A stretch of 64,000 nt of DNA. Source: Mytilus trossulus. Its lineage: Eukaryota. Of the stretch, positions 1,844 through 64,000 are shown one piece after another. Location of the stretch: the NCBI RefSeq assembly GCF_036588685.1, contig NC_086374.1, positions 54,560,001 through 54,624,000 on the forward strand. The letters run 5' to 3'. Position numbers and translations under genes: made by a program. A model generated the notes under the pieces. It searched no databases. It was not told the DNA's origin and worked only from the letters and a program-made list of their open reading frames with translations. Position 1 is the first letter of the stretch; each line of letters begins with the position of its first letter.

Positions 1844-1883
1844 TTTGTTCCTTGGTGATTTGTCCTGTAACTTCCAGATAAAC

Positions 1884-6191: not shown

Positions 6192-6300
6192 TGCAAGATC
6201 ACCAAAATACGTTGTAATATATACAATACTTATAAAAAGTAGATGATGTGGTAAGTATGTAAGTATTGTATATATTACAACGTATTTTGGTGATCTTGCA
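6192..6300. repeat. Perfect 41-bp inverted repeat with a 27-nt loop
   Basis: 6192-6232 is the reverse complement of 6260-6300. Confidence 0.85.
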
Positions 6301-7074: not shown

Positions 7075-7118
7075 GCGTCACTGGTGAGTCTTATGTAGAC
7101 GAAACGCGCGTCTGGCGT
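7075..7118 (+). ncRNA. Type I minimal hammerhead ribozyme with a core mutation (CUGGUGA), in a retrozyme/Penelope-type repeat fragment (~6945-7150)
   Basis: GCGUCA-CUGGUGA-GUC..GAC-GAA-ACGCGCGU-C-UGGCGU; stems I and II and a palindromic stem III form, but conserved A6 is G. Confidence 0.7.
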
Positions 7119-43306: not shown

Positions 43307-46300
43307 ATGACTGACATTGCAAATAAAAGGCATGAAATTGCCAAGGAGATTAGGGCCTTATTGATGTCAAGTCCTGCAGCCCTGACAATTGATGAACTAA
43401 GGAGAGATTTTCATCAGTTCATGGACAAACCTATTCCCTTTAGGGAACTTGGGTACTCCAATCTTGAAGACCTGTTAAGAGACATGACAGATGTTTTACA
43501 GATTACTTATAGAAAGGGAATGATGTGTCTTGAAGTTATCCCAGATGACACAACCCGCCACATTGCAAAACTTGTGTCTAAACAAAAAATTCCAAACAAG
43601 AACAAATATGCCACAATGAGGAGAGGGCCACCTCCTAGAAGGCAGCAATATAAAGTGACGCCTTCTTTGCCTCGTTATATAAAAGATAACATATCAGAAC
43701 TATTTAGATCCTATTCCAATGGCTTACCGTTAACTCATTTAGATACTGCTTATTCAAAGCGCTTTGGTTCGATGTTTTCATTTAATAGACTTGGCTTTGT
43801 GTCTATTAAAGAGCTTTTATATTCTATTCCTGAATGTGTTTTACTCAAAGAATTTCAAGGTGGAGAGTGGAGAGTTTTACCTGTACATATGAAAGCACCT
43901 GAAGGCAATTGGAGAACAAGAGGACACAAACCAGAAAAAAGAACTTTAAGTCCACAAAACAGACCCCCAGATGGATGGTCTAGGCAGTATGACCAAAGAC
44001 AAGCTGCTGCCGTTGTAGAAACACCACAACAATACAACAGCACCTTGACAAATAGAGTTGAGTCAGGAAGACCTGATACCACTGCTCAACAAAAGCCAAT
44101 CAGAGGAAGAGGGAGAGGTAGTTTGAATTTGTATTAAAACTATAGAAAAAATGTTATATGATATATACAAAAAAGAAAATAATCCGTTAAAAAAAAATAA
44201 TTTGTGGGATATATCACAACCCAAATTGGTGCCATTGGTCTTTACCTTAAAATTCAGTTAGATTAAACCTTAAACTAATGTTACTTCTAAGGTGTTGCAG
44301 GGGTTCAAATTAGTAATGAAATGTCGTCCGAGACTTATTGTTTTTCTGAGATACTATATTTTCGTTTGTTACAAAAGTACTTAACCTTTCAGCCTTTAGT
44401 ACTTTGATGCTGTAAATTGTATACAGGACCTATGGTTGTTCTTAAGTTGGGACATTAAACTTGATAATTCACAAAGTCATGTACCTTTCATTCTTAAAAC
44501 ATTGTAAAAGCAAATTTGAACCCCTGCGTTTATGGTGTTATTTAACAGTTGTTGAATTGCAATTAGTTGTAACCATTTATAAATTAAAAATCATTTTACG
44601 ATGCAATGATGTGTATAGGTCATGTAGGTTTTAATTGAAAAGTCTCTATTTTCAATAATAAAGAAAAAAAAAAAACTTCTTAAACAAAGTTGTTTTTATG
44701 TTCACAATAACAATTTACATGATTAAGACACATGCTTTTTGTTGTTGAAAATTACACACTAAATCTGAACGCTTTTTAACAACCTTTAAATAAATGCACC
44801 AGGATGTTTAATACTTTCATTTGACATGAAACACAGCCTATTAACCCCAAAATACTCATTTCCACTATCACACTTAAGTTTACACTTTTATATGTTCAAA
44901 TGATGGAAGACTAGTTTGTATGTGAAGGAATTTGAAATAAAATAGAAGACACGGATATGAAAAGGGGGAAAAATCTTTGCTTTTGATTGTGTTGTTTGCC
45001 TTACATAAAGACATGTAAATGTATTAATGATTTTCTGTACACATGATTAATATAGTAAATAGATGTTATTTATCATGTTTATCTGGTACAATTATTACCA
45101 TGGTTACTGTTTATGATTACAGGAATGAAGAGAAGCGCCAGCGGTGGAGATCAAGCATCTGTAGGTAGAGAAAGTGAATCCAGTTATAATTCCAATGAAC
45201 CAGAAATAGATCCAGAATGTTGTCTTGAAACAGAACCTAATGATGGAACACAACTACTCCAGACAGAATTAAGAGATGTCAGTTGTATATATTTTTTAAA
45301 TTGATCATATTATCTGTATGACCATCTGACACAATGTCTGACATGTAGGACACATTTCCAATGGTCAGATAGGCCAGACAAAGTATCTTACAAAATGTTT
45401 GATAAACATTACTATGGAACGCCATGACTGTCTTCTGATGTTGATTGCTGAATATGTTAGGTGCTTTATCCATTATGTTCAGTAGTATGTATATTATGTT
45501 CAGTAGATATCCTATTATGTTCAGTAGTTATTACATTATGTTTAGTAGTTTTTACATTATATTCGGTGCTTTGGTTATTATGTTCAGTAGTTTCATTTTT
45601 ATATGCAGTGGTATTTGAATTATGTTCGGTACTTCTGACGTTATGTTCAGTACAGTTCTCATTATGTTCAGTACATTCGACATTATGTTCAGTAGATTCA
45701 ATATTATTTGCAGTACATTATGTAATACCTTCAGTAGTCCCGGTTTCTTTATATTCAGTAGATTATTCATTATGTTCAGTAAAAGCATCGATATTATATT
45801 CGGTTCGTTCAACTTTATGTTCAGTGGTTGTATACATTATGATGATGTAGTAAAAGTCGGGAAGTCAATAACGGAAATTGTCGGAAAAAAACGGACGCGG
45901 ATATTTTTGACGGACGTTTTTTTCCTGGACACCGATATGCAACAAAATGTCGTCTGCTAGATTAAGAGTGTCACTATATAAAGTAGATTTAGGTACTTTA
46001 TATCAAAAATTCCTAGATGAAAAGGTTGAAGATGATAGCTTTAACTTTCTAACGGATGAAGATCTTAAAAGGCTTGGGGTCGAGACAATAGGTGACCGCA
46101 TACGTCTGAGAGAAAGTATGCGGCATCTGGATGTGCCAGAGTCAAACTTACAGCCTGACCAAGGTACCTTTATCAATTGAAAAGACTCGTATAGCACATC
46201 ATTTTAAGGGAATTAGTGTTCTCAAACATTTATAAGTTATATATGGTTCGCTACTCACTCCCCAGTACGGACCCATAGAGGGTTAGTAAAATCCATAGGG

Positions 46301-49300
46301 GGTGAGGCCGAAGTCCGAATACCCTATGGGTTTTATTGCCCCTCTATGGTCCGTAGAGGGTCAGTAGATAACCGTATAAAGAATAAATCGTTCGCTGTAC
46401 TTCTGCTGCGTTTTGATGAAAAATAATCAATTAATTCATTATTTTCAAAACAAACAATTTAGGTTATGGCAAATACATATTTAGACAAAACAAAAATATT
46501 GAAAACTAGACAATATTATCATAGATATAATATAGGGTTATTGCATGAATATTATACAATTACTGTCTTTTGGTGAGGTAAATATGTGGTTTTATTGACT
46601 TTTGAAAAACTGATATTCACTGAGGCCAACATATTTACCGAAACAAAAGACAGTAAATGTTTTATTCCATATTCCGAGAGAAATTAATGTTATGGAAAAT
46701 ATTTACCAAAACCAATTGTACACCAAACGGTTTTTTTACCAAAATTATACACGTAAAAGCACGCGACGTTTTGCGCGGTGAATATCCTTTTTTATTCAAA
46801 ATCCCATTCATATAGAAAAACCTACTAATATTTTATCAATATGGAATAATGGGGAATATTGTCCAGGGTAGAATTTTATATTGCACGAGCATTTTTCTTT
46901 ACTTGGGTGCGATAGGTAGTGTTTCATTTTGTCATTTATATTAGATTTAAGAAATTTGTATAGATGTGTTTATCATTTTCGTTCAAGTTATTTATTTTGT
47001 CATCCATTAGAGTTTGAAAATAGTTAATATAACTTTTTTTTTAATTGGGGTTGAAACTTTTAACGTTTTAGTCTGTTTTAAAGTTTTAGTTTCCTCAATA
47101 AGTTGGATGTCAATGTTATATCTTGTGACACATTTTTTTGCAAAAGTATTCCAAAAGTATGTTCCCTTAGTATCTACATTTTAAGTTAATTAAAGGCTTC
47201 ATTTAAAAGCGAGTTTAGATTTTCATTATTTAATCTAGATAGGTACATCATAGTTTTTTTTTATGAAAGTTTCTAGTCTTAGTTCATTTCTAACAGCTAG
47301 GTTTGTTAGCTTCTTTTTGTCCCCAGTACTTGTTAAATAAAATGTGGCTAGTTTTTTGTTCTAAAATAGTTTTATCAATAAAATGAATAGCATCTGGTGT
47401 TCAGCTATTTTTGTTAGCTCGGAGTTTAGCTCTATAAAATTGTATATAAGTGTCCATATGTGTAACATATTTCACTATTATATATGTTAGAATAGGTTTG
47501 ACCGTTTCAAAAAGGTTGTAAGATACTCTCACAGCGGAAGTTGTCCAAAGCCTGATTAGTAAGAATAAATAGCAAATAAAACTTGAAACACAACACAATT
47601 TATAGATGAAGTCACCATAAACAGCAGATGTGACGTCATGAAGCCCCTATGAAATTTACTGAACCCAAAGTATCCATAAGGGGTCATCACGTGACGGCTA
47701 TTAACCATTTAAAACGTGATAATTTACCCGGGGGTACGATCAATCGGATTATTCAGACAGTCAACTGTGTGTTCACCCTCCCCCTTTTCTCCTTTGATAT
47801 AAAGCGTTCAAATGTATAACAAAATAATTACGCAAGAGACTTTTTAATTTTTTACCGGCCAGTTTAAAGGTGATGGATGGTTTGCGGCTCCTCATCTCTT
47901 ACCCATGAAAACTTAAAATCTTTTGTACCCCCCCCTCTAAATTTAAGCGAATTAAGACAAATTATCCCCTTCTACAGCAGCCTGAAAAAAATTAAAGGCG
48001 ACAATAATAATACATGTAAATCTTGTAAATAATAAAAATGTGTCTGTGTAACTAGCATGGTTTTGGTTTGTTCTTCAAAATACCACCAAAGGGCAGTGTC
48101 TTGCCTGAATAAGAGCTGCATGATAGTGAAGACGTGCCCTTACTCCAAGATCGATTATGAATAGTAAGAAATCATGAACCTCAAGAAATCTGACCATAAT
48201 TGACGGTCCTGACACGAAAAAATCAATTGGTATTTATCCGTTTCAGATCCGTTCATCATCCATTTTATCCGTTATACGTCCGGTAGAAGTCCATTTCACA
48301 TTCGTTCAACATCCGTTAAACCACAGGCAAATGCCGCCAAAGGGCAGTGTCTGGACTGAACATTTTGAGCATGCTCAAAACTTTGAACGGACGTTCAACG
48401 GATAAAATGTCCGTTGAACTCCGTTAAGCGTCGGTTTTGTACATGGTACTCGTCCGTTTCGTTTCCGTTTTGTATCCGTTACGTGTCCTTTATACATCCG
48501 TTGGAGGTCTGGAAGTTAAATTCACCAACGGACGTCTACCGGACGTTTAACGGATAAAACGGACGATGAACGGATCTGAAACGGATAAATGTCAATTGAA
48601 AATTTCGCGTTTATAGAAATGCCAATTATTGGTATTTCAGATTTTTTAAGGTTCATGAAAGGTCAGGATAAATGATCGTTTTCTTGTACCCAAGTAAATT
48701 TTTGGTCATAGTTACCTATTCTCAGAATCGAAATAAAGCTGTAAATGTAACAATAATATAATTACTTGTTGTAGAACACCAAGAAAGGAGTTTATCGACC
48801 ATAGTAAATGAAAGATCAATGCTTTTTAGAAGAGATGGAACTTCCTCAAGTAGAAACAGAAGTAGAAGCAAGCAAACAAAACAGAAAACATGGACAGGAA
48901 CGTTTGTGTGTCTCTCAAACAGAAAACAGTCAAAAATACCAAAAGGAACAGAAAAAACGATTCTTTTCCGATGCGGTTTAGGTTTAAAACGGATTACTGC
49001 CAATCTTAACTTCACTGCTGAACAGTTGTTTAATGCAATAGAAGATATATACCCAAAACTTAAAGGATCAGGAGGCTTTGAATTTCTTAGATGCGGTCAA
49101 AACTGTAGAGATCTTCAAGTCATAGACTGCAATTGGTGTCCAGTTGAACTAAGAAACAATATAGGGTCGCAGGCTAAAATATACTTGAGACCAGTTCAGA
49201 AAGACCTAGAAACTTCACCATTGCACGAAGAGGTAGAAACCATTCAAAAGGAGACATGTACGTTCTGCAAACAAAACGTAAACCTTCGTGAGTTACGAGA

Positions 49301-52300
49301 TCATATCAAGTCATGCAGGATGTACCGAAATTTTGAGTTGCCTGACATTGACCCTCCTTCACCTCAACCGCTGATTGATATAGAAGAGCCAGAAGACACC
49401 AATCTTTCGGTAGGTGTTTCACTTGATATTGGGGCAAGAAACGAGGAGTCGCAGATTGAAATAGATGAGCCAGAAGACGCTATTCCTCCGTTAGGAGTTT
49501 CTCTTGGTGTTGGGACAAGAAACGAGGAGCCGCATATTTCAACTGAGACAGGTACTAAAATAATCACTTCAATGGAAGTTATGAATAACATAATTACCAT
49601 TCTCATCAAAACAGTGTTAATGTCACAGGCACTTGTTTCAGTGATTTTTCGTACGTGTATGGATAGTAGATATTATAAAAAAGAAGATGTGGTATGATTG
49701 CCAATGAGACAACTGTCCACAAGAGACCAAAATGATAAAGGCATTAACAGCTATAGGTCACCGCACGACCTTCAACAATGAGCAAAGCCCATACCGCATA
49801 GTCATGTTTTTTTTTATTTTATATACAATAGAGATAGTCATTGACAGTAAAACCTCGGGTTTTTTTTTATCACTTTTCGTAAAACCTCGGTTGACCCCCA
49901 CTAAACAAGCCCCTTCGGCTAAGGTAGCTCCGGTGTCTTCCTCCATCTTGGATTTTGAAGAAGCAGATAACTTTGGTCTACATATTTAATGAAATGTGAA
50001 AATTTTGAGAGTTATATGTAATTTATATAAAAGATGTTTAATATCAATATAGAAATTTGTGTGTTTCATCATAATTACAGCTGTAATTTCTTAAAAACTC
50101 CTTCTTTGTGTGTTTGATTAGATTTTTATTTCAACTATGCCAAATAAGGAGAGATAACTCAGATAAAGTATTTTTTATAATAGAAAATTATGAATTTACC
50201 TATTTTGAAATGTAGCAAGAAAACAAGTTATGTGACCCATTTTTTCTTCTTTTTTTTTTTTATCTGAAAGTATGTTATAAGAGCAATCTTCTCACATGTT
50301 ATATTAAAGTTCTGAAAGGACGTTTTCTTTTTATAACACAAAATTTATTTTCCATGCATAATCGATACAAAATCTGACAACCTGTAGCGTGACAAAAAGG
50401 TCCGTGACCCATACTTTTTAATATATTTTTGGAAAAAGCATGATAAAAACTTCATTTTGACAAGTTATAAAATATTCTTTCAATTCTAATCAAGACGCCC
50501 TAGGCACCTTATAATATAATAGTGGAACACTTCGACTTTTATATTTTATGGATCGTTATTATTCAATTGATAGAATGTCTGATGACTGTGATTCATTGGA
50601 TTTATCAAAACATCTGAAAGTAAGAAATTGTTTATGGAAGAAAATTCTTGCAACGTTTTATGAAGATCATTAGCTTACGTCATACAAATTTACATGTCAA
50701 ACATCTTACCCCGTGGATTTTTTTTTACATACTTAATTCGCATAGAATTTTTTCAATAAGAAAAAAAAGTCATCAGGTTTAAAGTATTTATGCATTGCAG
50801 AAAAGAATATTTCATCTGATGAATATTCTTTTTATATTAAATACACATCTTATAAAGTTTTTTTCGTAGGCAAGACGTTTCAACTAAGGCACTACACATG
50901 CGTCAAAAGGCTTCATTAGGGAGGAAATATTTATCAGAAAAATAAATAAGCAGCCTAATCATGCGCCAGTGGAAACACTTAATGATTCTTGTGCATTTTT
51001 TTTTAATTTTCGTAGTTTTATTTGGTATTAAAAAAATAAATTTCATGACATATGATTCAGGCTTGTGGGTTGTTCCTCATGGTTCTCCGTCTCCCAACCC
51101 CTTAATGTCTCGAAGAGTGATTTAGATTCCCGCTTATGCTCAAAATTTGATTGTCATGTATTTTTTTAGATTATTCTATTTTCAGAATCATCAAGTTTCA
51201 ATACAGTTTCAACAGAGCAACCATTTGCACAAATAGTGGAAAAAATAATAAAGTTTTGCAAAACCAATGCTATTGTTGATCCTGTAGAAATACTAAGAAA
51301 ATATCAAGAGGAAATGGTCATAGGGAGAGCCCTCGAGATAGAGGATGTAACCCAGTGTGCTGAAGGGGACACAAATTTCATTCTGATAGACAGATTTAGC
51401 CTTCTCCAGACTTCTATTGATGAAATCGGATCAATCTCAGATTTGAGATTAACACTGGAGGTGCAGTTTTACAATGAAGTAAGCTTCACTTGATATTTCT
51501 CAGTAGGAAAATACTAAAGGGACAGTCAAGCTCATAAATCGAAAAAATATGACATCCCCATGGCTAAAAAAAAGCCAACAGACAAAAAATAGTACACCAG
51601 ACACAACATAGAAAACTAAAGACTAAGCAACACCAATCCCACCAAAAAATGGGTGTTATCTTATGTAGTTTATAAGATTTAATTCAATTTGATTTTGTGG
51701 TGTTTTAACGCCAGTTTTAAGCAATGCATTTGAGAGATTTCGTAGCGTCCAGTTTCTAATGGTAGAGGTCGAGGAAGCCGGAGTGCCCGGAAATAACCCA
51801 CCGTCCTACGATAGGAAAACTGACATTCCAAGTCAATTAAGATTGGAGTCGACTGTACCCGCACGAGCGAGGTTCGAACTCACAACCTCAGTGTTGACTG
51901 GCTAGTGATTACATAGTAACTACTTTTAAAATAGACCATTCGACCACCGAGGCCTCTTGTTTATAAGATATCTTATATGGAAACTTTATAAGATATCCTA
52001 AGTGATTTATGAGATATCTTATTAATATTTGGTTATAGGATATGTCATATAATTTTATTTATAAGATATCTTAAAAACTATATATATACAATATATCTGT
52101 AATTTGTGTTTTGCAGAAATAATATAAGCATTGTGTATATAAGTTTGATAAAAACTCAACTTAGAGAAGGTGAACCAATTTTTCTGATAAACATCCATTC
52201 ACCAGTCACGTTAAATAAACCTAATTTGGAAAATCGGAAACTCCATAGTTTCGCATCTATGTATTTTTACATTTAAGTAGAAATGTAGCCAATGTTCACA

Positions 52301-55300
52301 AAATGATTATACATGAGTACCTGCACGTCGAAGACATTAAGCATGGAGTTCCCGAAATTTTCAACAGTGCCAAGTGGTCCTGAAGACATTGAAAATGTGC
52401 ACCTCCTGTTCAGGGCAAATTTGAAAATATTCAATATGAATCTTTCATATAAAATTTTTTATGTTTTCAAAAAATAGGTGGCTTTAGATTATGGAGGCCC
52501 CAGAAAAGAATTCTTCAGACTACTGATGCTAGCAATAAAGGAGAAGTATTTCGACAATGGGCTCAGAGATTTATTGGCAGATCAATACCTATTTGTTGGG
52601 AAAATATTTGGTAAGCGTAATCCGTTAATCCGTTTGTAACAATTTCAAGTTGTGTACCAATACGAAAACAAACGTGACTGTCATAAACAATTTTCGGTTT
52701 TGTTTGATCCATACATGAACTTCATTAATTTTATAACTTTAACCACAAGAAGAGCAATTCTTAACAGGACCATGTCTTTATAAGATTTTAACTTTAGAAA
52801 TTAAAGTTGCATTTTTTTTACAAATAAAAGTTTTGCAATTTATGATAAGACTTTTTAAGTTTTAACCCGCCAAAGTGGATAATTTGAAGCAATTGCATTT
52901 TAGGTTATTTTTATAAAATCAGCAAAAATGATGAAAACACTGTACTAATTATGTTGATGTTGGTACATGATATTGTGTTTCATTATTTAATCTTTGTATT
53001 TTACTTTTACGTGACCATGTCCGTAGTAAGCGAAACAGGCGCAATCAAATAAAAACCAGACAGTGTACTTTGTTGTAAAGTTACAGCAGATTTCATTTAG
53101 TGTGTATCCAAAGATATTACTAATAGTCCAGTCAAACTAAGATTTAACCTCAAACTAATTGCAACAGAAAATGTTTTAGTTCTAATCTATAGCATTATGC
53201 CCTTTATATACACAGAAAAAAGTCCCATAAAATCTAACTTGAGGAAAACTCAAAATCAGCACTTTTAATTTCCTATGGAAATTAACATTGGAAGGGGAGA
53301 TAACTCTTACAAAAATGAGTCTTTTTTGGTCAGTTTTTGGTTGTTTTTCTTGAAATGTATGTACAGTATGATACTTTGATGGGGTTATAAGTTTGTATTT
53401 GACTGAAATATATAATCTTCTGCTCATGAAATGTACAAAACCAAAATGGAATGGGTAGTTTTATTTTTTTCATGCATTTTTCATTAAAGAATTTGCAAAT
53501 TTGAAGCTTTGTAACCATTTTGAAAAAATAATGTGAAAATTTGGTAATGTTTATATCTGTATATTATATTATTTCAGCAACTTTCTTATCTAAAGAAACT
53601 TTAAACCACAAAAAGGAGAATACATGCTTAATTATTTTTATTAAATTTGAGATTCTTTACCTTGACATGTTGAAAAATTCAATAAATGGTCAACTAATGA
53701 ATAACGAAATCTAGATTATAGCTTGATAAAATATATGAAAACACATTAAGAGTTGTTTATTATACTGTAAAGACCACTAAAAATCAAAAATCAATACATT
53801 CTGATGGATAGAAGAGGTAAAGTTATAATTTTGTATCAATTTTTATTGATATTTCTGCCTTTTTTGCAAGAGTTATCTCCCTTTACAATACAAATCTACA
53901 TAGGAATTTTAAATGGTGATTTTTTTAGTCTTCCTCAAGTTAGATTTTATGGGACTTTTTTCTGTGTATATTTGGGGTATAATGCTAAAGATTTAAACTT
54001 TTAAATCTTCTGTTGCAATTACTTTTAGGTTAGGGTCAAAATTATGCTAGATAGACTGGACTATAATATCGTTGGTTAGCTTGCTTGTTAGCTGAACCGT
54101 GAAGTCATTGTTCTGTCAGGTAAACAACCCTCCTTTAAGAGTAGACTAGTCCGGCAGATAACCAATCTACCTATCTGTTGGACTAGGCTACTTCGAAAGA
54201 ATGGTAGTATACCTGACCTGATAATGAGTTCACGGTTCAGCTAACAAGCAAGCTAACTAAAGATACTACCTTTGTCTACATACTCAATGAAATCTGCTGT
54301 AAATGTTTTTTTTTATCTTTTCCTTTTCAAGCATTAAGTTCACTTCAAAATGGAAAACTGCCAACTTTTCTTGAATCTGCTGTTGTGGATGAATTGTTCA
54401 ACAATACTGACAGTAACTCAATATGTATTACAAATCTACGACAAGGAATGGATGCTTTAGGATTTTATACTGTAAGTTGGAATTTTCACTTATACTAGTA
54501 GTTTTACTGTCATATTTCAGAAAATAAGTGCAAGTGTTTCGTGATTATGAAATAAATAAGATGTGTATTCTAAAATGTAAAAACGCGTAATTTATTAAAT
54601 GAAAACTAACTCATTTGTTCAGACATTCAGATGCATTTTGAAGATATGAAACATGTATCAGTTTGCTTTTACAACAACTTGTATTCACGGATGATTGATT
54701 CAGTTACATTACCGGTAATAAATTTAAATTTTTGGATCTTCATTATTTTCATCATTTAATCAAGTGAAAGTTTCTATCTGTCTTTTATTGTTTAAACAAA
54801 ATGTGTCGAAATGGCACGAATGACCCCGTCTCAAAAAGTTGAAAAATTTGCGATTTCAATAACACAGGTAGACACAAACATGATGGTAGTCTAACATATT
54901 AAAACTCAGCTTTATATCTGAAAGCGTTTGGGGGAAAAAAAAATCCGTATAACTGTGATTTCAACAAGTTATCAAAGTTCAAAGCCCGTAATGTCGGCAA
55001 CGATTAGCAATGCAGAACATAACTTAAACTTAATCTGTATCTCATCATTGTTAACTCACATGCGAAAAATCAGGGCAATATCTGAAAGCGTTTAGAAAAA
55101 ACTGATAAAAACATTATTTGCTTGCCTTTCAAGGGTAATTACTCTTACAAGGAGTTGTCCAACAAGTTTGACCCAAAGCACACTTTATCATAAGGATAAT
55201 ATATGCTATCGGAAGTTTCTTTCTATCTACATGTATCAGAGTTTTAAAAAAGGTCATAATTTTTCACCTTTCAAGGGCAATAACTCTATCAAGGAGTTGT

Positions 55301-58300
55301 CCATACTAACTTCTTATATCTAATGACTACCCTTTACTTTTGTTTATTGATAGATTTGCAAGGCATTACCGAGTCTAGTGTTTTTATTTCAAAACAACAC
55401 GCCTGCATTAACCATGAGAGGGATTCTACATGTGTTGAAAGCCCAGTTTAGTGAAGAAGGCAGTAATGCCTATTCTTTTGAAAAGCTGGTATATGGAGCC
55501 TTTGTGAGATATCTAAGAGAAGTTGGAAGTGAGTACAATGTAGACTAAACCAAGTACTTATATAATATATTTTGCATCTCTTGAACAGTTGTTCTCTCTC
55601 ACTTTTTTCTCTGCTATATTACAATACATGGTTAGAGATTTTGTGTAAAGCTCGATAATTTTGAATTGTAATTTATGGTACACGTAGTTCTAGTATAATA
55701 TATCGATCCTTATTTTTATCTCCCTGTGATTTCAAGTCAGTGTCAGATGTATTATAACCCAGTGGTGGAAGTGACATTGTAATATTTTCCATACCGTACT
55801 GTATAGATCTCAGAGAGCATTTACACCAAACAATATATCTTAAATGTCCAGGTTAAGTTTTCAGTAAGATATTATACAATACGTGTATATTATATTTGAA
55901 ATAGGCTTGTTTCTTGGTGTTTGTTTGTGTTTTTAAATTATAATTGTCTAATTGTCTCATTTAAGGTGGACGAAGAAGTGCTGTACTCCTGGAAAGTGTT
56001 CTACAGTTTGTCACTGGAGCGACCGAGGAGCCTGTTTTGGGTTTTAAAATCCATCCTTCTATTACCTTCTATGAAGTGGAGACAACATTTTTACCAACAG
56101 CGAACACGTGTATTAGTAGTTTGGGACTTCCTAGGCCATCTTACAATACTGGATTACCAGAGGATGCAGAATTGTTCGAAACCTATGACTACGCTTTTAC
56201 AAGCACATTTTATGGCTTGAAGTAGGCAAAACACTTACTTGTTCTTCTGGTATTGAAACAGTTTTAATTTTATATCATTATTCAACCTGGAAGAAATAAG
56301 ATTTACAAGTATTGATTATAATTGGTCTTTTGCTTAATTTTATGTTTCTAAATACAGAGTAGTATGCTTATAATTATTGTAATTTTGACATAGTCCTTTC
56401 CAACCAGATTAAAAGAGGTCTTAAAACACAGCTCTGGCAATCCACCATTTTATTTTGTGCTCTTAAGACCTTTAAATGGATCATCGATGAGTCATTTAAT
56501 TTGATACAGCAAATATAATAGTTTACAATTCATAATTACGACTTTATGATTGCAAACGCCTTCAGATATACATCAATACCATGATCGTGTGACCTCCAGT
56601 TTAATGGACAGTTCTGGCGTAATGTTTGAAGTTTATCGTTGGGTACAGAAACTGAAGAAGACAACAATTTTACCCCTTGTGTACCCTGGCCATTTTCTTG
56701 TTCATCGGGGTTATCGTCAGTTACTAATTCATTACTGTCAGGTAGGGGCGGTGATTCATCAACAGTGTTGTTCATCACACTTGTGGTAAACATCTGCATA
56801 GGTGTTTTACGGACAGTTCTGATACGATGGTTCGCCCAAGCAGTTTTCCAAATTCCAAGTTTTTCATTTACTTTGTGCAAATACACATGGTGCAGTGCAT
56901 ACATATTAAGTTCATCTAAAGGATCTAATACTCCGATGTCTTCCATATAATAAAATAAATCATAATAGTATGACAAAACTCCAGCATAAACATCTCGCCA
57001 GAGACGCTCTATGCGCTGGTTATGAACACTTTTTCCAGTTATCATGCTACCTCTTCCTGAACCTCTGTTTTTTATCATGTAATCTGCAATTAAAGTGTTC
57101 TCTCTACCCATATCTGAACGGACTCTGGATGGAAGTCCATATGTACTAACGCCTCTCACAAAGCAATTTAATAAAGTCTCTGCTTTGTTATTATCAACAC
57201 ACTCAAGAAAAGTAATCAAACGACTGAATCCATCGATACCACCAGCTATTATCATATTCCATCGTATAAGCTTGTGGTTCGTGTCTACATGCCACAAAGT
57301 ATTTGGAGATTGCACACTGTAGGTTCTCCTATGTAACCGTCCCTTTTTTCTTTCTAGAATACCTTTTCTGTCTACACGGTACATGCTGTCTCTGAGTCTG
57401 TATCTTTGAATCTAGAATTGATTATTAAAATAATCTTATAAGTTATACCTCAAGTTATTCGCGGATGTGTTCTAGTAAATTAATGATATAAAATGTTTTG
57501 TTGTCTATATACATATAAATAAAAAATCATTAATGTATATATGTACACGAATGTGGAAGAAAATCTCAAGAACGTTAGCCAAAAAAGGATCGATAACTCT
57601 GCATGGATGATAAAACATTTTTAAGCGGGAAAATACGAATGCCTTCTCAAATTCATGCTATTAGAAAAGAAATCAAAATATTACAGAAGAGTATGATCCA
57701 CCATGTTCTTACACTTCACTATAATTAATATAGTAGAATAAAATGATATACAAATGCATGAAAATGATATATACAAGTATTAACATGATTAATGTAATAT
57801 AGAACAGATCTATCATGCTATGGAGGGGTATTTGTGAAAAATTCCAGTCGAGGGACTGTGAAATTTCCCAAGCCGCTAGGTATCTGTTTATTTACACCGA
57901 ATGAGTTTTTATTGAAACTGTTTGTATATAATAGAGAAATCGTAGTCCCGCGGGAATTACTACATGAACTTACATACGCGTTAGTGCTTTTTGTAACCTC
58001 AAGGTATCTAAGTGTGAAAGTCATTGTTATTCCATCTTTAAATCGTACATTTGTATAGACGTCTTTTTCCCCACTTTATATCTGAGATTTTCTTTTTAAA
58101 GGTTTTCGGTTTAACTCAATCAATAGGGCTTAACCACGTTGTCTATAAAATGTTATTTGCCGCAAATTCAACAGCAGTGGTGAAAAACGTTAAAATTCTT
58201 TTGAAATGAGGAAAAAATATAAGAATATGCAAAAATACACAGGCTATCAACCAATCAAAATTTAGCATTCTTATATAAGGTGCAATTAATAACAATCAAC

Positions 58301-61300
58301 CAGTATACTGATTTGTATCACTTCATATTAATAATCATTGTGGTGAGGTTAAATTTCCTGTCATTAATTCATCATCCATGCACGAACTTGTCCCATAAAT
58401 AATCATATCTGTACATTTACCTCACTTTCGGGTTTATAGATGTGATTTTTTTTTCTGAAACAAGTGCTTTTCGGACCATCCTCAAGAACTTGCGGTTATC
58501 CGATGTTCAGTACTTCAGTAATTTGATTATAGTTCGTTATTACGTTCTTACTTGTGTTGAACTTTTACATCACTGTCTCATGTGTTGGGGAGGGATGAGA
58601 TTCCCGCGCTAACATGTCTAACCGTGTCGTATATTCTAAATATATGATAATGTGTCAGTCTCAAATCAGGAGCCTGCAATTCATTGGTTGTCGTTTTTTG
58701 ATGTGTTACATATTTGTTTTTCATTTAATTTTTTTATTACTAATAAGGCCTTAGTTCATTCGTTTTAATTGTTTTATAGATGAATTGCAGTATGGGTTGT
58801 GCTCATTGTTGAAGGCCGTAAGGTGACCTATAGTTGTTAATTTCTGTGTCATTTTGGTCACTCAGTGTGGAGAGTTGTCTCATTGCATTCATACCAAATC
58901 TTTGTTTTTACATTGACCATTTGGTATATGGCCGTGCTTTAAGCGACACGTACATATAGGTCATACTGGTACCGTTAATTTTATTACTACCACTGGGTCG
59001 ATGCATCTGCTGGTGGACTTTTAGTCCCCAAGGGTATCACCAGCCTAGTGGCCAGTACTTCGGTACTGCCATGAAAATACGGATTTTTTGTGTTATTAAA
59101 ATTTGCTGTTACAAATATTAGAAATTATTATAAATTAAGGAATGTATCTCCCTCATGCAAAGCTCTGATTCCTTTCACGGATTTGGCTATACTTTTTGGA
59201 CCTTTTGGATTATAGCTCTTCATCTTTTATATAAGCTCTGGATTTTAAATATTATGGCCACGAGCATCACTGAAGAGACATGTATTGTCGAAATGCGCAT
59301 CTGGTGCAAGAACATTGGTACCGTTAATTTTATTAACTATTTTAAAGAAATCAAATCGTTAACTGATAATGGGTGCCATAGGTGGTTCACCGGAATTTTC
59401 TTAGAGATAGGAAACTAAGGGTGTTACTTAAACAGAAAAGGGGAGTGTCAAATATTTCATGTATATTTTGAACAAAGAGAGGAATACCTCGGCAGCCTTT
59501 GCCAAATCAAAACAATGTACCTTCGGACTTTGTGTTTCGAATTGTAGTTACCTTTTCATACTTAGTATTTATTCTAATTCAAGCTCCATGTGATGCAAGA
59601 AAATACTGAGTATCTTGGAGCAAGGCTATTTTCTTCTTTTCGGGGGGAGGGGGACTCCTAGCAAATAACATGTTTATTATGGCATTGTAGAGATTTTCTG
59701 ATTAAATAAATAAAGTTGCCGATCCGGTACATGAATAGATCGGTTAAAAAGCATTTTTTTAAAATTGCAATTAAATTGGAAAAGCTTAATACGAGGGTTG
59801 GAAATTGAGAGCACAAAAAGGGGGTTGGGGGTTTGTTCCACAGGGAAATTTTTATCTTATGAATTCTACCTTTGAAAGGTTAATATACTATTAGGTAATT
59901 AAAAGAGAAAAAAAAAAAAAAAAATGTGAAAAAAAGATTAATGGTTTTTCTTCCATGCCTAGAATTTGCTTCCATTGAAATTTTGCAAACATCCCAGAAC
60001 AAATCACATGAATGATTAATATTGACCATTTGGTATAAAAAAAAAAATATTCAAATATGATGTAACGTGTTCCGAAATCTATGCATTTTTTGAAACAACC
60101 TGATCCGAACTTTCCGTATCTTAATTATGTTGTAGTATGACCCACACACAGGCGGCAAACAGAGGTCTACCCGGGGGTTGATTTCACTATCAAAATACGA
60201 CGGGAAGGGGCACTTTAAATTTAACCCCCTACCTGAAATTATTCAGGTCATGTGAAATTGTAGATCACAACTTATCCAAAGAAACGAAAATTCTGATCTG
60301 AAATTGTCAAAAAAGGATCAGGGGCGGATCCAGCCATTTTATAAAGGGGGTCCTAACCAAGGTCAAAAAAGGAGAGGGTGTTCCAACTATACATGTCCCC
60401 ATTCAAATGCATTGATAGTCCAACAATCACATTTAAGTCAATCAGTTTTTGATTAATGAAGCAATCTTGCTTCTCTCAGAATATATTTTAAGCATACTAT
60501 GGCTAGTAATATTTGTATACACCAGATCTTTATTTGATTTGAATATATTAATAATGTCAACAATTTCGGCTAAATCAATGTTGATCGGATCAGATACCGT
60601 GATTTTCAGATCTATTGTAAATGTCTGTAATTATCATATCCACATCGTAAAGCCGGGAAATGGATCAGAAACATACTAGTGTTTAAAAATATTCAATTTA
60701 GGACTGGGGTTTTGGAATGTATGGTACAAACCTTAATGTTTTGTTGGGCTAATATCTGCTTTAATAGACTCACTCCACAGCAAGGAAATTCCACTACCTG
60801 TTTTGCAACAACAGCATCTAAATCCTCGTCAGAAATGTTAGAAAATTCAAGTTTGCTCAAATTATACATTTTCATATTTCTATAAATTGTACTCTCTGAT
60901 ACACTAAACATCTCACTAATTTCTATAACAGTTAAATCAATTTCAAGCAGGGACTCCAGTGCTTCTTTGGGAATAAAAAACTTGTTATTACTCTTAGTCA
61001 AAATATTGCTGCTAAAATGAACACACGCAATTCTTAATTCCATTATTTTTCTCCTGTCGTTCATACCTAAATATGCGAAATCTTGAAGCGACAACTTGCA
61101 AATTAAGTCAGGTGTTATTTTTTCCTGGTGAAAAATTCCAACTTGGGAACGTAAACCACACCGATTCAAAACTGCTTCCATTTCTTCCATTTTCATTCAA
61201 TCACTTAAAGGTGTTCATGAATAAAACGTCCGTCAAAAGTATCCGCGTTCGGTTTTTTCCGACAATTTCCGTTATTGACTTCCCGACTTTTACTACATCA

Positions 61301-63401
61301 TCATAATGTATACAACCACTGAACATAAAGTTGACCGAACCGAATATGATATCGATGCTTTTACTGAACATAATGAATAATCTACTGAATATAAAGAAAC
61401 CGGGACTACTGAAGATATTACATAATGTACTGCAAATAATATTGAATCTACTGAACATAATGTCGAATGTACTGAACATAATGAGAACTGTACTGAACAT
61501 AACGTCAGAAGTACCGAACATAATTCAAATACCACTGCATATAATAATGAAACTACTGAACATAATAACCAAAGCACCGAATATAATGTAAAAACTACTT
61601 AACATAATGTAATAACTACTGAACATAATAGGATATCTACTGAACATAATATACATACTACTGAACATAATGGATAAAGCACCTAACATATTAAGCAATC
61701 AACATCAGAAGACAGTCATGGCGTTCCATACATTACCTCAAAACTGCCAATTATTTGGTCAGACAGATTGTAGGCTTTCAATTGGCCTCAGTTTGGTTAA
61801 TGTTTCTCTTTTTAGCTTACCTTGCCCATACCAAAATTATGTAAATATTTAGGTTGAAATTACAAATTGATATGAAATAAATGATAAATAAAAGGATATA
61901 TTCAGTTCAGATAATAAAATAATCAACTATAAGTTATCTGTTATATTACCATGCTAAATATTATTGTGTTTATATACATGTATGTCTAGTTATGAAAATT
62001 TTACTGAACTTTGTATGCTTTCAGTTGCTTGCTGAAAAAACAGAGGGGATATGGGCTAGTCAGTTACCATTCTTATACAAGGTTTGTATAATGCAGTGTT
62101 TCCAACACAGCCTTACACTTTTTTGAGTCCTCTTCATTTTTAGGGTGGTTATTTGGGAAAGATAGCCTAAACATTTATCATTTGTTTATACATGTTATAG
62201 GAAATGATCAAATAAGATTGAAAAAAATAAAAAAATAATTAAAAACTTAAACCCAGAACCATAGAGCTTGATGATTGTCTAAGTTGATAAGTTGATGTGG
62301 TGATAACTTCAAGATGGATGTCAAATTTGATAAAACTCCTTGCAAAAGAAAATACTGTGGATTCTTGATTTTCATCATGTTCATGGATTGAGGAAAAATT
62401 GTATTTTCATGTTTCTAAAGTCAACATTCAGCCCTGTAAATTAAAAATAAAATTGAACATTTTAAATGCATCAATCAACTTACCCATGAAGTCCATGAAC
62501 ATGATGAACAAATGGTAGTCTACATATAATAAGGAATCTAAAGTATCACAATTTATTAGGAGGAATTACACATTTATTGCTGTTCTTCGTCTTAACAGTT
62601 GTTTGAAGGTCTTCAGTAATGAACAAACCAGCTTGCATCTAACAACTGTACCAATGTAAAGATAGCATCTGGCATCTACCTAAATAGTATTTTGATGCCC
62701 CACCTACAATAGTAGAGGGGCATTATGTTTTCTGGTATGTGCCTCTGTTTGTCTGTTTGTTCGTTCCGCTTCAGGTTAAAGTTTTTGGTCGAGGTAGTTT
62801 TTGATGAAGTTGAAGTCCAATCAATTTGAAACTTAGTACACATGTTCCCTATGATATGATCTTTCTAATTTTAATGTCAAATTAAAAATTGACCCCAATT
62901 TCATGGTCCACTGAACAAAGGAAAAGATAGTGTGAAGCTCAGGTTAAAGTTTTTGGTCAAGGTAGTTTTTGATGAAGTTGAAGTCCAATCAACTTGAAAC
63001 TTAGTACACATGTTAACTATGATATGATCTTTCTAATTTTAATGCCAAATTAAAGTATTGACCCCAATTTCATGGTCCAGTGAACATGTAAAATGATAGT
63101 GTGAGTGGGGCATCCATGTACTATGGACACATTCTTGTTTGTTATCTATCACTTGATGTTATACGTTACTTTGGTTTATCGACATTTGTCTTGTAATTGG
63201 TATATGTGTATCAATATTAATTTTAATATTTTTCATTTCAGATGAAATACAGTAAACTCCTCAATTTTAAAGACCTAGGGTACATGAGTGTTATAGAGTT
63301 ATGTAATTCTTTTCCTGACCAGATTTTGATAGAAAGACCTGTATCCAAGGGAGATTGGTTATTGTATGATGCTAGAGTTCCTAGAAAATCACCTAAAAAG
63401 G
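43307..63401 (+). CDS. TDRD5: TDRD5-like (Tejas-type) LOTUS-domain piRNA-pathway gene, 5' exons 43307-44117, 45123-45277, 62025-62081, 63242-63401; continues beyond the window
   Basis: Extended LOTUS1 KEIRALLMS...PFRELGY...DMTDV...[16 protein letters not shown]; LOTUS2 YSKRFG..F.FNRLGF; LOTUS3 assembled across exons 2-4 (LQTELRD|[19 protein letters not shown]|[20 protein letters not shown]); phases consistent. The Tudor domain is not in the window, so TDRD7 is not fully excluded. Confidence 0.75.
44298..44526. mobile_element. Small MITE
   Basis: CAGGGGTTCAAATT...AATTTGAACCCCTG TIRs. Confidence 0.6.
45413..45933 (+). repeat. Left TIR (521 bp) containing 17 units of ~21 bp (45473-45835)
   Basis: Reverse complement of 61210-61730 with about a dozen substitutions and no indels seen; core TTATGTTCAGTA. 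Confidence 0.95.
45947..56225 (+). CDS. Transposon-encoded SAM / UBZ zinc finger / HECT E3-ligase-like protein, 664 aa; exons 45947-46163, 48775-49551, 51186-51478, 52478-52610, 54332-54471, 55354-55528, 55966-56225
   Basis: SAM ([20 protein letters not shown]); CX2CX11HX3C at 49257-49316; HECT motifs LEVQFYNE|[26 protein letters not shown] (catalytic Cys), C-terminal FYGLK; all six introns GT-AG and in phase, no stops. Confidence 0.88.
48212..48610. mobile_element. MITE in intron 1 of the HECT gene
   Basis: ~80-bp TIRs (caattggtatttatccgtttcagatccgttcatc / gatgaacggatctgaaacggataaatgtcaattg). Confidence 0.75.
51679..51958 (-). mobile_element. tRNA-derived SINE
   Basis: Minus strand GGCCTCGGTGGTCGAATGG (A box) and GTGAGTTCGAACC (B box); 11-bp TSD GTTTATAAGAT (51668-51678, 51959-51969). 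Confidence 0.8.
53084..54299. mobile_element. Tc1/mariner-type hairpin MITE (TA TSD) interrupted by a Harbinger-type MITE
   Basis: TA-CAGCAGATTTCATT...AATGAAATCTGCTG-TA; the arms rejoin once 53124-54066 is removed. Confidence 0.75.
53124..54063. mobile_element. PIF/Harbinger-type MITE with ~190-bp imperfect TIRs
   Basis: TAGTCCAGTC...GACTGGACTA; TAA TSD (53121-53123, 54064-54066). Confidence 0.75.
56536..61196 (-). CDS. IS3EU-type DDE transposase with N-terminal SAM and HTH domains, 446 aa; exons 61196-60732 and 57411-56536
   Basis: SAM-like [34 protein letters not shown]; [22 protein letters not shown]; catalytic WHVD...[32 protein letters not shown]; phase-0 GT-AG intron; no lesions. Confidence 0.92.
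58967..59335 (+). mobile_element. Non-LTR retrozyme: one 349-nt monomer plus a 20-nt terminal direct repeat
   Basis: TGGTACCGTTAATTTTATTA at 58967-58986 and 59316-59335; contains a hammerhead ribozyme. Confidence 0.75.
59264..59307 (+). ncRNA. Intact type I minimal hammerhead ribozyme; predicted cleavage after C59301
   Basis: Stem I GCAUCA/UGGUGC, core CUGAAGA, stem II GACA/UGUC, GAA, palindromic stem III AUGCGCAU, AUC cleavage triplet. Confidence 0.85.
61210..61730 (-). repeat. Right TIR (521 bp) with the mirrored ~21-bp array (61308-61670)
   Basis: TACTGAACATAA cores; reverse complement of the left TIR. Confidence 0.95.
62692..63140. repeat. HINE/Helentron-type element with two ~168-bp tandem satellite units
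   Basis: tcaggttaaagtttttggtc...gatagtgtga at 62771 and 62939; short subterminal IR (atgcccc / ggggcat). Confidence 0.6.
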
Positions 63402-64000
63402 GTAAATATTCATCACATTCTACCAAAATTATTAAGCCTATAAATAAAAATAGTGTTAAGGCTACATAGCTCTTGAACCTATTCAAATCAGTCACAACTA
63501 TTAATGAATTTCAGTTTATTAAAGGGCATCGTTGTCAAATTCATGTTCACATATTTATTTTTTTTATTTTTAGCTCACCTGGCCCAAAGGTGACGTCAAT
63601 TGTTGTCGTCGTTAACTTTTACAAAAATCCTCTCAAACTACTGGGCCAAATTTAACCAAACTTGGCCACAATCATCATTAGCGTATCTAGTTTAAAAAGA
63701 AAACCAAGATTGCCGCCATGGCTAAAAATAGAACATGGGGTTATAAAACTTAAACCAAAGCATTTACAGAAAAGCTTTAAAAAAATGTTTATCAAGTCAA
63801 GATCTATCTGCCCTGAAAGTTTCAGATGAATTGGACAACCGATTGTTGAGTTGCTACCCCTGAATTGGTAATTTTAAGGAAATTTAGCCGTTTTGGTTAT
63901 AATCTTGAATATTATTATACAGTACTCTTCAAAAATATCGATTCAATAACTTTTTTCTCCGATTTCCGTGTTTCTCGGAATCACACCGAGTACCGCGGAT

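What the first reader, a model, noticed from the sequence alone, without database searches (positions are those of the whole stretch)
45947..61196. Both transposon proteins start with a SAM domain: a possible built-in docking pair
Seen: HECT protein residues ~1-60 (45947-46125, ..[41 protein letters not shown]) and transposase residues ~1-60 (61196-61020, ..[42 protein letters not shown]) both fit the SAM pattern but are divergent from each other. Established: SAM domains form head-to-tail homo- and hetero-oligomers; bacterial IS3 transposases have no SAM. Inference: SAM-SAM contact recruits the E3 to the transpososome, or the E3's SAM caps a transposase polymer. The HECT SAM has a markedly acidic mid-loop ([11 protein letters not shown]) and the transposase SAM a basic end helix (DRRKIMELR), a complementary arrangement.
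Basis: inference. Interest (0 to 1): 0.85.

Follow-up and report, generated by a model that had tools for sequence, protein, structure and literature searches.

The report
Mussel transposon: two SAM-headed proteins
Both genes of a 16-kb mussel DNA transposon, its transposase and a ubiquitin ligase, begin with the same kind of small protein-assembly (SAM) domain; this is conserved across the transposon family and appears undescribed, but that the two domains bind each other is still only weakly supported.

Summary
The window comes from a Mytilus genome. It holds a 16.3-kb IS3EU/GingerRoot-type DNA transposon at 45413-61730, with 521-nt TIRs (98% identical), TATGG..CCATA ends and a 6-bp CATTAC target duplication. 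It carries two convergent genes, and each ATG lies 14 nt inside a TIR.

Residues 1-62 of both proteins are five-helix SAM domains.
- The transposase N-terminal profile hits the tankyrase-1 SAM (E 2e-5).
- The HECT N-terminal profile hits the BICC1 SAM (E 1e-9).
- The two profiles match each other in the same register (hhalign 97%, E 3e-11).
- The two AF2 models have almost identical helix boundaries, and Foldseek returns mainly SAM domains for both.

The pairing is a family trait. Six diverged subfamilies in this genome carry both a SAM-HTH-integrase-core transposase and a SAM-zinc-finger-HECT gene. The transposase SAM is conserved in other bivalves and a coral. SAM-HECT proteins occur in scallop, Solemya and a hemichordate.

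The docking idea is only partly supported. The hetero-complex prediction gave "weak support" (0.58; best control 0.05). Six pairs showed no co-variation. Both families have an acidic-mid/basic-end charge pattern, so it fits self-polymers equally well.

Derivatives with one gene's first exon at both ends suggest the two SAM exons arose by end duplication.

Sibling notes of this scan cover this same element.

The parts
45407..45412 (.). left target-site duplication CATTAC
   Evidence: Read directly. The same hexamer follows the right TIR.
45413..45933 (+). left terminal inverted repeat, begins TATGG; holds internal sub-repeats
   Evidence: I1: 521 nt, 98% complementary; 97.7%.
45947..46163 (+). 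HECT-ligase gene exon 1. The ATG is 14 nt inside the TIR. The SAM domain is residues 1-62 (45947-46132). GT donor follows at 46164, phase 1.
48775..49560 (+). HECT gene exon 2 (linker and C2HC zinc finger). The AG acceptor is at 48773-48774 and the frame continues from exon 1. The 3' end is approximate.
   Evidence: junction; zf_C2HC_14 E 2.8e-4; collinear with P0126, P0158, P0139.
51185..51490 (+). HECT gene exon 3; limits approximate, taken from homology
52478..52612 (+). HECT gene exon 4 (HECT N-lobe motif); limits approximate
54289..54468 (+). HECT gene exon 5; limits approximate
   Evidence: P0158 residues 590-641, 47% identity.
55354..55530 (+). HECT gene exon 6; limits approximate
55965..56225 (+). 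HECT gene last exon: C-lobe with the catalytic-cysteine motif, stop codon at 56223-56225
   Evidence: 59% identity to the P0158 C-terminus.
56536..57411 (-). transposase exon 2 (291 aa plus stop): rva_4 integrase-core (DDE) domain and C-terminal tail
   Evidence: PF24764 E 2.1e-77; AG acceptor, phase 0.
57412..60734 (-). transposase intron, GT..AG, 3.3 kb. It is absent from the single-exon sister copy on C1.
60735..61196 (-). transposase exon 1 (154 aa). The ATG is 14 nt inside the TIR. SAM is residues 1-62 (61011-61196), a beta-hairpin follows, and the HTH is residues 77-110 (60867-60968).
61210..61730 (-). right terminal inverted repeat, ends CCATA on the + strand
61731..61736 (.). right target-site duplication CATTAC

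Best explanation
The element is an apparently intact two-gene IS3EU/GingerRoot DNA transposon. Both of its proteins carry, at the extreme N-terminus, homologous SAM domains of the polymer-forming kind (closest to tankyrase, BICC1 and ANKS). Both genes start a few nucleotides inside identical TIRs, so they are probably co-expressed from the same promoter and 5' leader.

Shown:
- both N-termini are SAM domains;
- the two SAMs are homologous in the same register;
- the pairing is conserved across six diverged subfamilies in this genome, and each half is conserved in other phyla or classes.

Inferred: the SAMs are assembly modules.
- In the transposase, the SAM sits in front of the HTH and the DDE core. 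It would bring protomers together for synapsis, as the leucine zipper does in bacterial IS3-family OrfA/OrfAB.
- In the ligase, the SAM lets the HECT enzyme self-associate and, most likely, join the same head-to-tail SAM assembly as the transposase. That would place ubiquitin-transfer activity at the transposition complex.

My odds:
- both are SAM: 0.97;
- the SAMs mediate oligomerisation: about 0.7;
- a direct transposase-SAM/HECT-SAM contact: about 0.4.
What the ligase ubiquitinates is unknown.
For: Element anatomy:
- TIRs.
- 6-bp TSD and TATGG..CCATA ends. These match the published IS3EU traits (PMC10045372; PMC12730594: TAYGG..CCRTA, 6-bp TSD).
- rva_4 core E 2e-77.
- Weak IS481/IS3 similarity.

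SAM identity.

Gene models are in frame and collinear with full-length relatives.

Conservation of the pair:
- Complete pairs at the window and at C1, C8:553, C13, C9 and C8:473.
- ATGs lie 14-55 nt inside the TIRs in most of them (213 nt in one).
- About 450-aa transposases from Mytilus, Crassostrea, Pinctada, scallops, Dreissena and the coral Desmophyllum keep the N-terminus, with near-invariant positions including an E-x-I-T-P-D-I motif.
- SAM-zinc-finger-HECT proteins occur in Pecten maximus, Solemya velum and Ptychodera flava.

Cross-family likeness:
- The HECT-SAM profile scores transposase SAMs up to 40.5 bits, against 40.9 bits for its best PDB SAM.
- The transposase-SAM profile scores a HECT SAM at 31.6 bits, against 27.2 bits for tankyrase.
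- The scallop HECT SAM is 40% identical to the window transposase SAM.

Complex test: verdict 'weak support'.
- Score 0.58; best of 3 controls 0.05.
- The mark was reached by 51 of 78 solved complexes and 2 of 108 mismatched pairs.
- At 0.60 or under, it was reached by only 5 of those 78 solved complexes and by all 4 mismatches that passed (of 180).
- The runs agree in at least 100% of their contacts, and the partner's pLDDT is at least 80.
Against: - There is no experimental or RNA evidence.
- The complex score is in the band the tool calls more often wrong than right, and many SAM-SAM complexes are solved, so the pass may come from memory of the generic contact.
- Six pairs show no co-phylogeny (Mantel r 0.04; 310 of 720 permutations as high). 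Within-element SAM identity is no higher than between elements (0.256 against 0.251).
- The charge pattern fits homo-polymers as well as hetero-polymers.
- The transposase SAM lacks the T-I-G-D-R helix-5 motif that is invariant in the HECT SAM.
- One transposase lineage with a SAM (C4:7329659) has no HECT gene within 20 kb downstream, so the transposase SAM may work without the ligase.
Confidence: 0.4

Rival explanations
1. The two SAMs are independent self-association modules. The transposase SAM multimerises the transposase and the HECT SAM oligomerises the ligase (or tethers it elsewhere). The two proteins never touch through their SAMs.
For: - Both families have the acidic-mid/basic-end polarity typical of self-polymerising SAMs.
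- No co-variation among six pairs.
- A transposase lineage with a SAM has no HECT gene within 20 kb.
- The helix-5 motifs of the two families differ.
Against: - Retaining the same domain at the same position in both proteins of a selfish element, across subfamilies only 33-59% identical, is more easily explained by a shared function.
- The hetero model scored far above its controls (weak support).
Confidence: 0.3
2. Historical by-product. The transposon's ends are recurrently homogenised over a stretch that includes the first exon. An ancestral SAM-transposase element acquired a second copy of promoter plus SAM exon at its other end, and that copy was spliced onto a captured HECT gene. On this reading the shared SAM says more about origin than about binding. 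It is compatible with either functional reading above.
For: - Non-autonomous derivatives carry transposase exon 1 at both ends, inside inverted repeats of 766 + 287 nt (L053) or longer (L054). At least ten such inverted pairs appear.
- Inverted pairs of the HECT-type SAM exon 2-14 kb apart appear.
- Both ATGs lie 14 nt from the TIR ends, and both SAMs start at the same residue.
- Each SAM profile ranks the other family at or near the top of all SAMs tested.
Against: - The two SAMs are only 23-30% identical, no closer to each other than the HECT SAM is to BICC1/ANKS6 (30-34%).
- Long conservation of both SAMs argues they are not mere relics.
Confidence: 0.35
3. The SAMs target host SAM proteins (for example Polycomb-type, tankyrase or BICC1/ANKS-type polymers) or RNA. 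They would direct the transposase and ligase to a host compartment rather than to each other.
For: - The closest solved relatives are host polymer SAMs.
- Hetero-SAM pairing between related families is well established (for example PDB 4NL9 ANKS3/ANKS6 and 5J8Y Scm/Sfmbt, both listed).
Against: There is no evidence for any host partner. Sequence identity to host SAMs is low (about 20-34%).
Confidence: 0.12
4. The transposase N-terminus is not a real SAM and only looks like one.
For: The window copy gives no Pfam SAM hit at E <= 1. Foldseek E-values are about 0.1.
Against: - Profile E 2.3e-5 with almost only SAM hits.
- hhalign E 3.4e-11 to the HECT SAM family.
- A confident five-helix model with the same helix limits as the HECT SAM.
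- 16 of 32 relatives give SAM_1 hits, and the best SAM_2 hit is E 5e-6.
Confidence: 0.03

Closest known systems
[quoted passage not shown]
   Same: 6-bp TSD, TA..TA (TAYGG..CCRTA) termini, TIRs, IS3/IS481-like DDE transposase (Pfam rva_4), presence in bivalves, corals and fish.
   Different: The papers I could read describe no SAM domain in the transposase and no HECT gene in an IS3EU element. A search for 'IS3EU' together with 'HECT' found no paper. 'Ubiquitin' occurs in neither of these two papers, and every 'SAM' hit shown was inside another word.
Fungal TET/JBP-carrying IS3EU elements (PMC12730594)
   Same: IS3EU elements that carry accessory enzyme genes beside the transposase, with the transposase and an accessory gene in opposite orientation. 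Same terminal motif and TSD length.
   Different: The accessory genes there are a TET/JBP dioxygenase and an alpha-kinase. No shared N-terminal domain between transposase and passenger is reported.
Bacterial IS3-family OrfA/OrfAB (IS911), which multimerise through a shared N-terminal leucine zipper (my own knowledge, not checked here)
   Same: Two proteins from one IS3-type element share an N-terminal HTH-adjacent oligomerisation motif and can form heteromultimers that regulate transposition.
   Different: There the shared N-terminus comes from one reading frame plus frameshifting, the motif is a coiled coil rather than a SAM, and the second protein is a regulator rather than an enzyme.
Polymer-forming and hetero-pairing SAM domains: tankyrase (5KNI, 8ALY), BICC1 (4RQM), ANKS3/ANKS6 (4NL9)
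   Same: Best sequence-profile and fold matches of both transposon SAMs. Five-helix fold. An acidic mid segment and a basic segment at the start of helix 5.
   Different: Identity is only about 20-34%. Those SAMs sit in host scaffold or enzyme proteins, not in a transposase or a HECT ligase. Polymerisation of the transposon SAMs is untested.
HECT E3 ligases (AREL1, NEDD4/Rsp5 family; G2E3-like)
   Same: The C-terminal HECT domain has the catalytic-cysteine motif. AREL1 HECT is the best PDB sequence match of the scallop relative (E 1.3e-9).
   Different: To my knowledge no human HECT ligase has an N-terminal SAM. SAM+HECT clusters exist only as automatically named mollusc and cnidarian proteins. 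Here the gene lies inside a transposon.

Membership tests
SAM domain (Pfam SAM_1 PF00536 / SAM_2 PF07647) | Sequence match to the family model above the curated cut-off | tested here: inconclusive
   The window copies are below the cut-off: HECT SAM_2 18.8 bits against 20.5, and no hit for the transposase. Relatives pass: P0126 SAM_1 26.9 bits against 23, P0124 33 bits, and the best transposase relative gives SAM_2 E 5.2e-6. Family profiles hit solved SAMs at E 2.3e-5 and E 1.1e-9.
SAM domain (Pfam SAM_1 PF00536 / SAM_2 PF07647) | Compact five-helix bundle of about 60-70 residues with a long C-terminal helix 5 | tested here: met
   AF2 models of both proteins have pLDDT 82.5 and five helices with nearly the same limits. 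Foldseek top hits are SAM domains at probability 1.00, with TM by target about 0.6-0.74 for the listed single-domain SAM chains.
Polymerising / hetero-pairing SAMs (tankyrase, BICC1, ANKS3-ANKS6 type) | Head-to-tail mid-loop/end-helix contact shown by binding or polymer formation | not testable with these tools
   Only a prediction is available: 'weak support', 0.58 against a best control of 0.05. The charge polarity is compatible with such a contact but is not specific to it.
IS3EU/GingerRoot DNA transposons | 6-bp target-site duplication | tested here: met
   CATTAC at 45407-45412 and at 61731-61736.
IS3EU/GingerRoot DNA transposons | TIRs with TA..TA (TAYGG..CCRTA) termini | tested here: met
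   The TIRs begin TATGG and end CCATA. They are 521 nt long and 98% identical. The published motif is in PMC12730594 and PMC10045372.
IS3EU/GingerRoot DNA transposons | IS3/IS481-like DDE transposase core | tested here: met
   PF24764 rva_4 E 2.1e-77 and rve E 1.4e-4. The sister copy matches NCBIfam IS481 (E 1.8e-12) and IS3 (E 5.8e-9), both below the equivalog cut-offs. I did not map the catalytic residues individually.
HECT E3 ubiquitin ligases | HECT domain with a C-lobe catalytic cysteine | tested here: met
   The last exon carries the conserved cysteine motif and is 59% identical to the C-termini of P0126 and P0158, whose HECT hits pass the cut-off (28.4 and 30.7 bits against 23.9).
HECT E3 ubiquitin ligases | Complete N-lobe with the E2-binding subdomain | not tested
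   Pfam matches in relatives cover only profile positions about 214-285 of 306. A sibling note questions the N-lobe. I did not examine it.

The most novel reading that the evidence does not exclude
The two SAM exons are paralogues made by inverted duplication of a transposon end (TIR + promoter + first exon). This would give IS3EU elements a built-in way to hand any captured gene both the element's own promoter and an N-terminal tag that co-polymerises with the transposase. The HECT ligase would be the retained example: it is recruited by SAM-SAM contact to the transpososome, where it ubiquitinates the transposase or nearby host or chromatin proteins.
Probability: 0.2. Interest if true: 0.85.

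Novelty: new variant of a known kind. Interest (0 to 1): 0.62.

Why it matters
SAM domains are classic self- and hetero-assembly modules. In the literature I could search, I found no DDE transposase described with one and no transposon described as carrying its own HECT ubiquitin ligase.

A conserved pair of SAM-headed proteins, both driven from identical TIRs, gives a concrete and cheaply testable hypothesis for how a eukaryotic DNA transposon might couple transposition to the host ubiquitin system. It also suggests how transposon end duplication could create new chimeric genes.

If the SAMs do not pair, the finding still adds a new domain architecture to the IS3EU superfamily. It also corrects database annotations that miss the transposase SAM: only 1 of the 120 listed relatives carried a precomputed SAM hit.

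Tried and rejected
1. Single-sequence Pfam on the transposase N-terminus found no SAM hit. Profiles and structure superseded this.

2. BLASTP of the two window SAMs aligned only 24 residues at E 0.019. It is too insensitive; hhalign was used instead.

3. Co-phylogeny and co-variation across six element-internal pairs gave Mantel r 0.04 (310 of 720 permutations as high). Within-element similarity was not raised. This gives no support, but the power is very low.

4. Charge complementarity as evidence for a hetero-pair is rejected as non-specific.

The only hint is that P0116 (transposase) and P0146 (SAM-HECT family) share a longest-contig length of 11,836.

7. A tree of the two SAM families together with host SAM domains of this genome could not be built.

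Exons were searched one by one, by reference. Intron-less sister copies (L031, L051) or database proteins stood in for the full-length proteins.

It was redone from references.

10. A homo-oligomer prediction for comparison could not be run, because only one complex job was allowed.


Full report
**What is there**

The window is AT-rich animal DNA with few long open frames.

Between 45413 and 61730 lies a 16.3-kb element.
- It is bounded by 521-nt inverted repeats that are 98% complementary.
- The repeats begin TATGG and end CCATA.
- They are flanked by a direct CATTAC hexamer at 45407-45412 and 61731-61736.
- These are the published marks of the IS3EU/GingerRoot superfamily: 6-bp TSD, TA..TA ends, and TAYGG..CCRTA in fungal families (PMC10045372; PMC12730594).

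The minus-strand gene is a two-exon transposase.
- Exon 1 is 61196-60735 and encodes 154 aa.
- A GT..AG intron follows.
- Exon 2 is 57411-56539 and encodes 291 aa, joined in phase 0.
- Exon 2 holds an rva_4 integrase core (PF24764, E 2e-77).

The plus-strand gene has seven exons from 45947 to 56225.
- The exons are collinear, without stops, with 780-786-aa proteins of Pecten maximus and Solemya velum.
- Those proteins carry SAM, a C2HC zinc finger and HECT.
- The exon 1/exon 2 junction (G|GT at 46163/46164, AG at 48773-48774) keeps the reading frame.

Exons were searched one at a time, by reference.

**Check of the observation**

The quoted peptides are the true translations.

Pfam on single sequences is marginal.
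- The ligase N-terminus gives SAM_2 at E 0.0019, just below the cut-off.
- The transposase N-terminus gives nothing except an HTH at residues 83-115.

I therefore collected paralogues from the same genome. The results from their profiles were:
- A profile of nine transposase N-termini hits the tankyrase-1 SAM at E 2.3e-5. Nearly all of the top ~30 hits are SAM domains.
- A profile of seven ligase N-termini hits the BICC1 SAM at E 1.1e-9 and ANKS6 at E 3.7e-9.
- The two profiles match each other at 97.2% probability and E 3.4e-11, starting at residue 1 of both.

AF2 models built on 30-32 sequences have pLDDT 82.5 each.
- Transposase helices: 2-12, 16-24, 29-32, 37-42, 48-61.
- Ligase helices: 4-12, 16-24, 29-32, 37-42, 48-60.
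- Foldseek's best matches for both are SAM domains at probability 1.00.
- For the transposase the top match is the tankyrase-1 SAM, rmsd 2.0 A over 55 columns, TM by target 0.71.

Across relatives, 16 of 32 transposases and 28 of 30 ligase-side proteins give SAM_1 hits at E <= 0.1.

After the SAM, the transposase continues with a beta-hairpin, an HTH at residues 77-110 and two more helices before the catalytic core.

**A family trait, not a one-off**

In this genome I found six diverged elements that carry both genes convergently. In each, a SAM heads both proteins:
- the window copy;
- C1:51.84 Mb, where the transposase is a single 452-aa ORF and the ligase's first exon of 335 aa joins the SAM directly to the zinc-finger region;
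- C8:55.3 Mb;
- C13:48.97 Mb;
- C9:50.69 Mb;
- C8:47.3 Mb.

Their transposase SAMs are 33-59% identical to one another, and their ligase SAMs are 28-45% identical. Where the TIR ends could be placed, both ATGs lie just inside them: 14/14, 55/52, 54/25 and 16/213 nt.

Outside this genome:
- About 450-aa transposases of Mytilus, Crassostrea, Pinctada, scallops, Dreissena and the coral Desmophyllum cover 97-99% of the query and keep the N-terminal domain. Near-invariant positions include an E-x-I-T-P-D-I stretch and M-x-L-R at the start of helix 5.
- Relatives of the ligase N-terminus occur in Pecten, Solemya, Mytilus edulis and the hemichordate Ptychodera. Those long enough also end in HECT.
- An atlas search lists mollusc and cnidarian clusters with HECT plus SAM_1.

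Precomputed annotation flags a SAM in only 1 of the 120 listed transposase relatives.

**How it most likely works**

Shown: two homologous SAM domains of the polymer-forming kind sit at the same position in two proteins. Both proteins are encoded just inside identical TIRs, and the arrangement has been conserved through deep divergence.

Inferred: the SAMs are assembly modules.
- A DDE transposase must multimerise to pair its ends.
- Bacterial IS3-family proteins do this with a leucine zipper next to the HTH, and OrfA and OrfAB heteromultimerise through that shared N-terminus. This is my own knowledge and was not checked here.
- A SAM in front of the HTH could play the same role.
- A ligase with a related SAM, made from the same promoter, would then be able to join the assembly.

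The single complex test (ESMFold2, residues 1-68 of each) gave the verdict "weak support":
- Score 0.58; best of 3 controls 0.05.
- The mark was reached by 51 of 78 solved complexes and 2 of 108 mismatched pairs.
- At 0.60 or under, it was reached by only 5 of those 78 solved complexes and by all 4 mismatches that passed (of 180).
- The runs agree in at least 100% of their contacts, and the partner's pLDDT is at least 80.
- Because many SAM-SAM complexes are solved, and close cousins of true partners also pass, this shows likeness to known SAM pairs. It does not show that these two bind.

I put a direct hetero-contact at about 0.4, independent self-association only at about 0.3, and host-SAM or RNA targeting at about 0.12.

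- Charge pattern. The [quoted passage not shown] is real in this copy: ligase segment 23-43 is -5 and transposase segment 44-61 is +2. The ligase's own 44-61 segment is also basic, however. Across 32 and 29 relatives, both families average acidic in 23-43 (-1.6 and -2.8) and basic in 44-61 (+1.2 and +1.7). That is the usual polarity of self-polymerising SAMs.
- Co-variation. Six cognate pairs show no co-phylogeny (Mantel r 0.04) and no raised within-element similarity. The test has little power.
- Independence. One transposase lineage with a SAM (C4:7.33 Mb) has no ligase gene within 20 kb downstream.

The most conserved surface stretch of the transposase SAM is on the mid-loop side (E-x-I-T-P-D-I). 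That of the ligase SAM is at the start of helix 5 (T-I-G-D-R), although the latter is close to the generic SAM signature.

**A possible origin**

This genome holds many short derivatives in which one end, including the first exon, has been copied to the other end.
- L053 has transposase exon 1 on both sides, inside inverted repeats of 766 + 287 nt.
- L054 is similar.
- One search lists at least ten such inverted pairs.
- One search lists inverted pairs of the ligase-type SAM exon 2-14 kb apart.

Three further observations fit the same idea:
- the ATG-to-TIR distance is equal at both ends;
- the two SAMs are in the same register;
- each profile ranks the other family at or near the top of all SAMs tested (40.5 against 40.9 bits; 31.6 against 27.2 bits).

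Together these make it plausible (about 0.35) that the ligase's SAM exon began as a duplicated transposase first exon that was spliced onto a captured HECT gene. I could not test this with a tree that includes host SAMs.

**Comparison with what is known, and novelty**

The element is a member of IS3EU/GingerRoot: the TSD, terminal-motif and transposase-core tests were all met. Multi-gene IS3EU elements are known in fungi, carrying TET/JBP and alpha-kinase genes (PMC12730594).
- I found no paper linking IS3EU with HECT.
- The two IS3EU/GingerRoot papers I searched for 'ubiquitin', 'HECT' or 'SAM' mention no ubiquitin ligase or SAM domain.
- A third, a broad DDE-transposon survey, holds neither 'IS3EU', 'SAM domain' nor 'ubiquitin'.
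- A full-text search for "sterile alpha motif" with "transposase" found nothing relevant.
- The library is incomplete, and Repbase entries could not be read.

I rate the finding a new variant of a known kind.

**Limits**

- There is no RNA evidence and no experimental evidence.
- Sibling notes of this scan describe the same element: the two-gene transposon, the TIR as promoter, the host LOTUS-domain gene, the TIR sub-repeats and the HECT N-lobe. I checked the first two myself and the third in part.

Noticed in passing
L053 (G000:C8:31910000-31917000) 1337-5306; L054 (G000:C2:59252000-59261999) 1901-7669: These are short non-autonomous derivatives with the transposase first exon (SAM+HTH) at both ends, inside inverted repeats of about 1.1 kb or more. 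One search lists at least ten such inverted exon-1 pairs on C1, C2, C3, C6, C7, C8, C9, C12 and C14.
   Followed up: partly
G000:C2:75466762(+)/75471655(-); C5:57410196/57414967; C4:43093116/43095247; C8:15462842/15464722; C3:63864916/63868191: Inverted pairs of the ligase-type SAM exon lie 2-5 kb apart. They look like derivatives with the HECT-side end copied to both ends. The sequences were not fetched.
   Followed up: no
window 43307-44137 (+) and 63242-63469 (+): The flanking open frames encode OST-HTH/LOTUS domains (PF12872, E 1.3e-23, for the upstream one). The transposon therefore appears to sit inside an intron of a TDRD5/7-like germline gene. The downstream frame was judged by eye only.
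   Followed up: partly
window 45448-45738 and 61362-61695: The TIRs contain internal short sub-repeats, seen as shifted self-matches of 70-78% (I2-I4, I8, I10, I11, I13, I14). The TIRs of the sister subfamilies are also tandem-repetitive. These may be arrays of transposase-binding sites.
   Followed up: no
window 60734-57412; L031:1403-2761; L063; L066; L068: The transposase intron varies among subfamilies. The C1 copy has none (a single 452-aa ORF). The window, C13 and C8:553 copies have one of about 3-3.7 kb at the same place. In the C9 copy, exon 1 is itself split.
   Followed up: partly
window 53145-54032, 54064-54268, 48212-48610: There are nested short inverted-repeat structures inside introns of the ligase gene: arms of 111 nt (86%), 97 nt (81%, 11-nt loop) and 84 nt (87%). 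They are probably MITE-like insertions.
   Followed up: no
P0116 and P0146: A transposase relative and a SAM-HECT-family relative from ENA assemblies both list a longest contig of 11,836 bases, so they may lie on the same contig in another organism.
   Followed up: no
G000:C4:7329659 (L017, L055, L056): A SAM-HTH-rva_4 transposase open frame of 348 aa has no ligase gene in the 20 kb downstream. A related high-copy family of short elements (L025-L030) keeps only the SAM exon behind tandem-repeat TIRs.
   Followed up: partly
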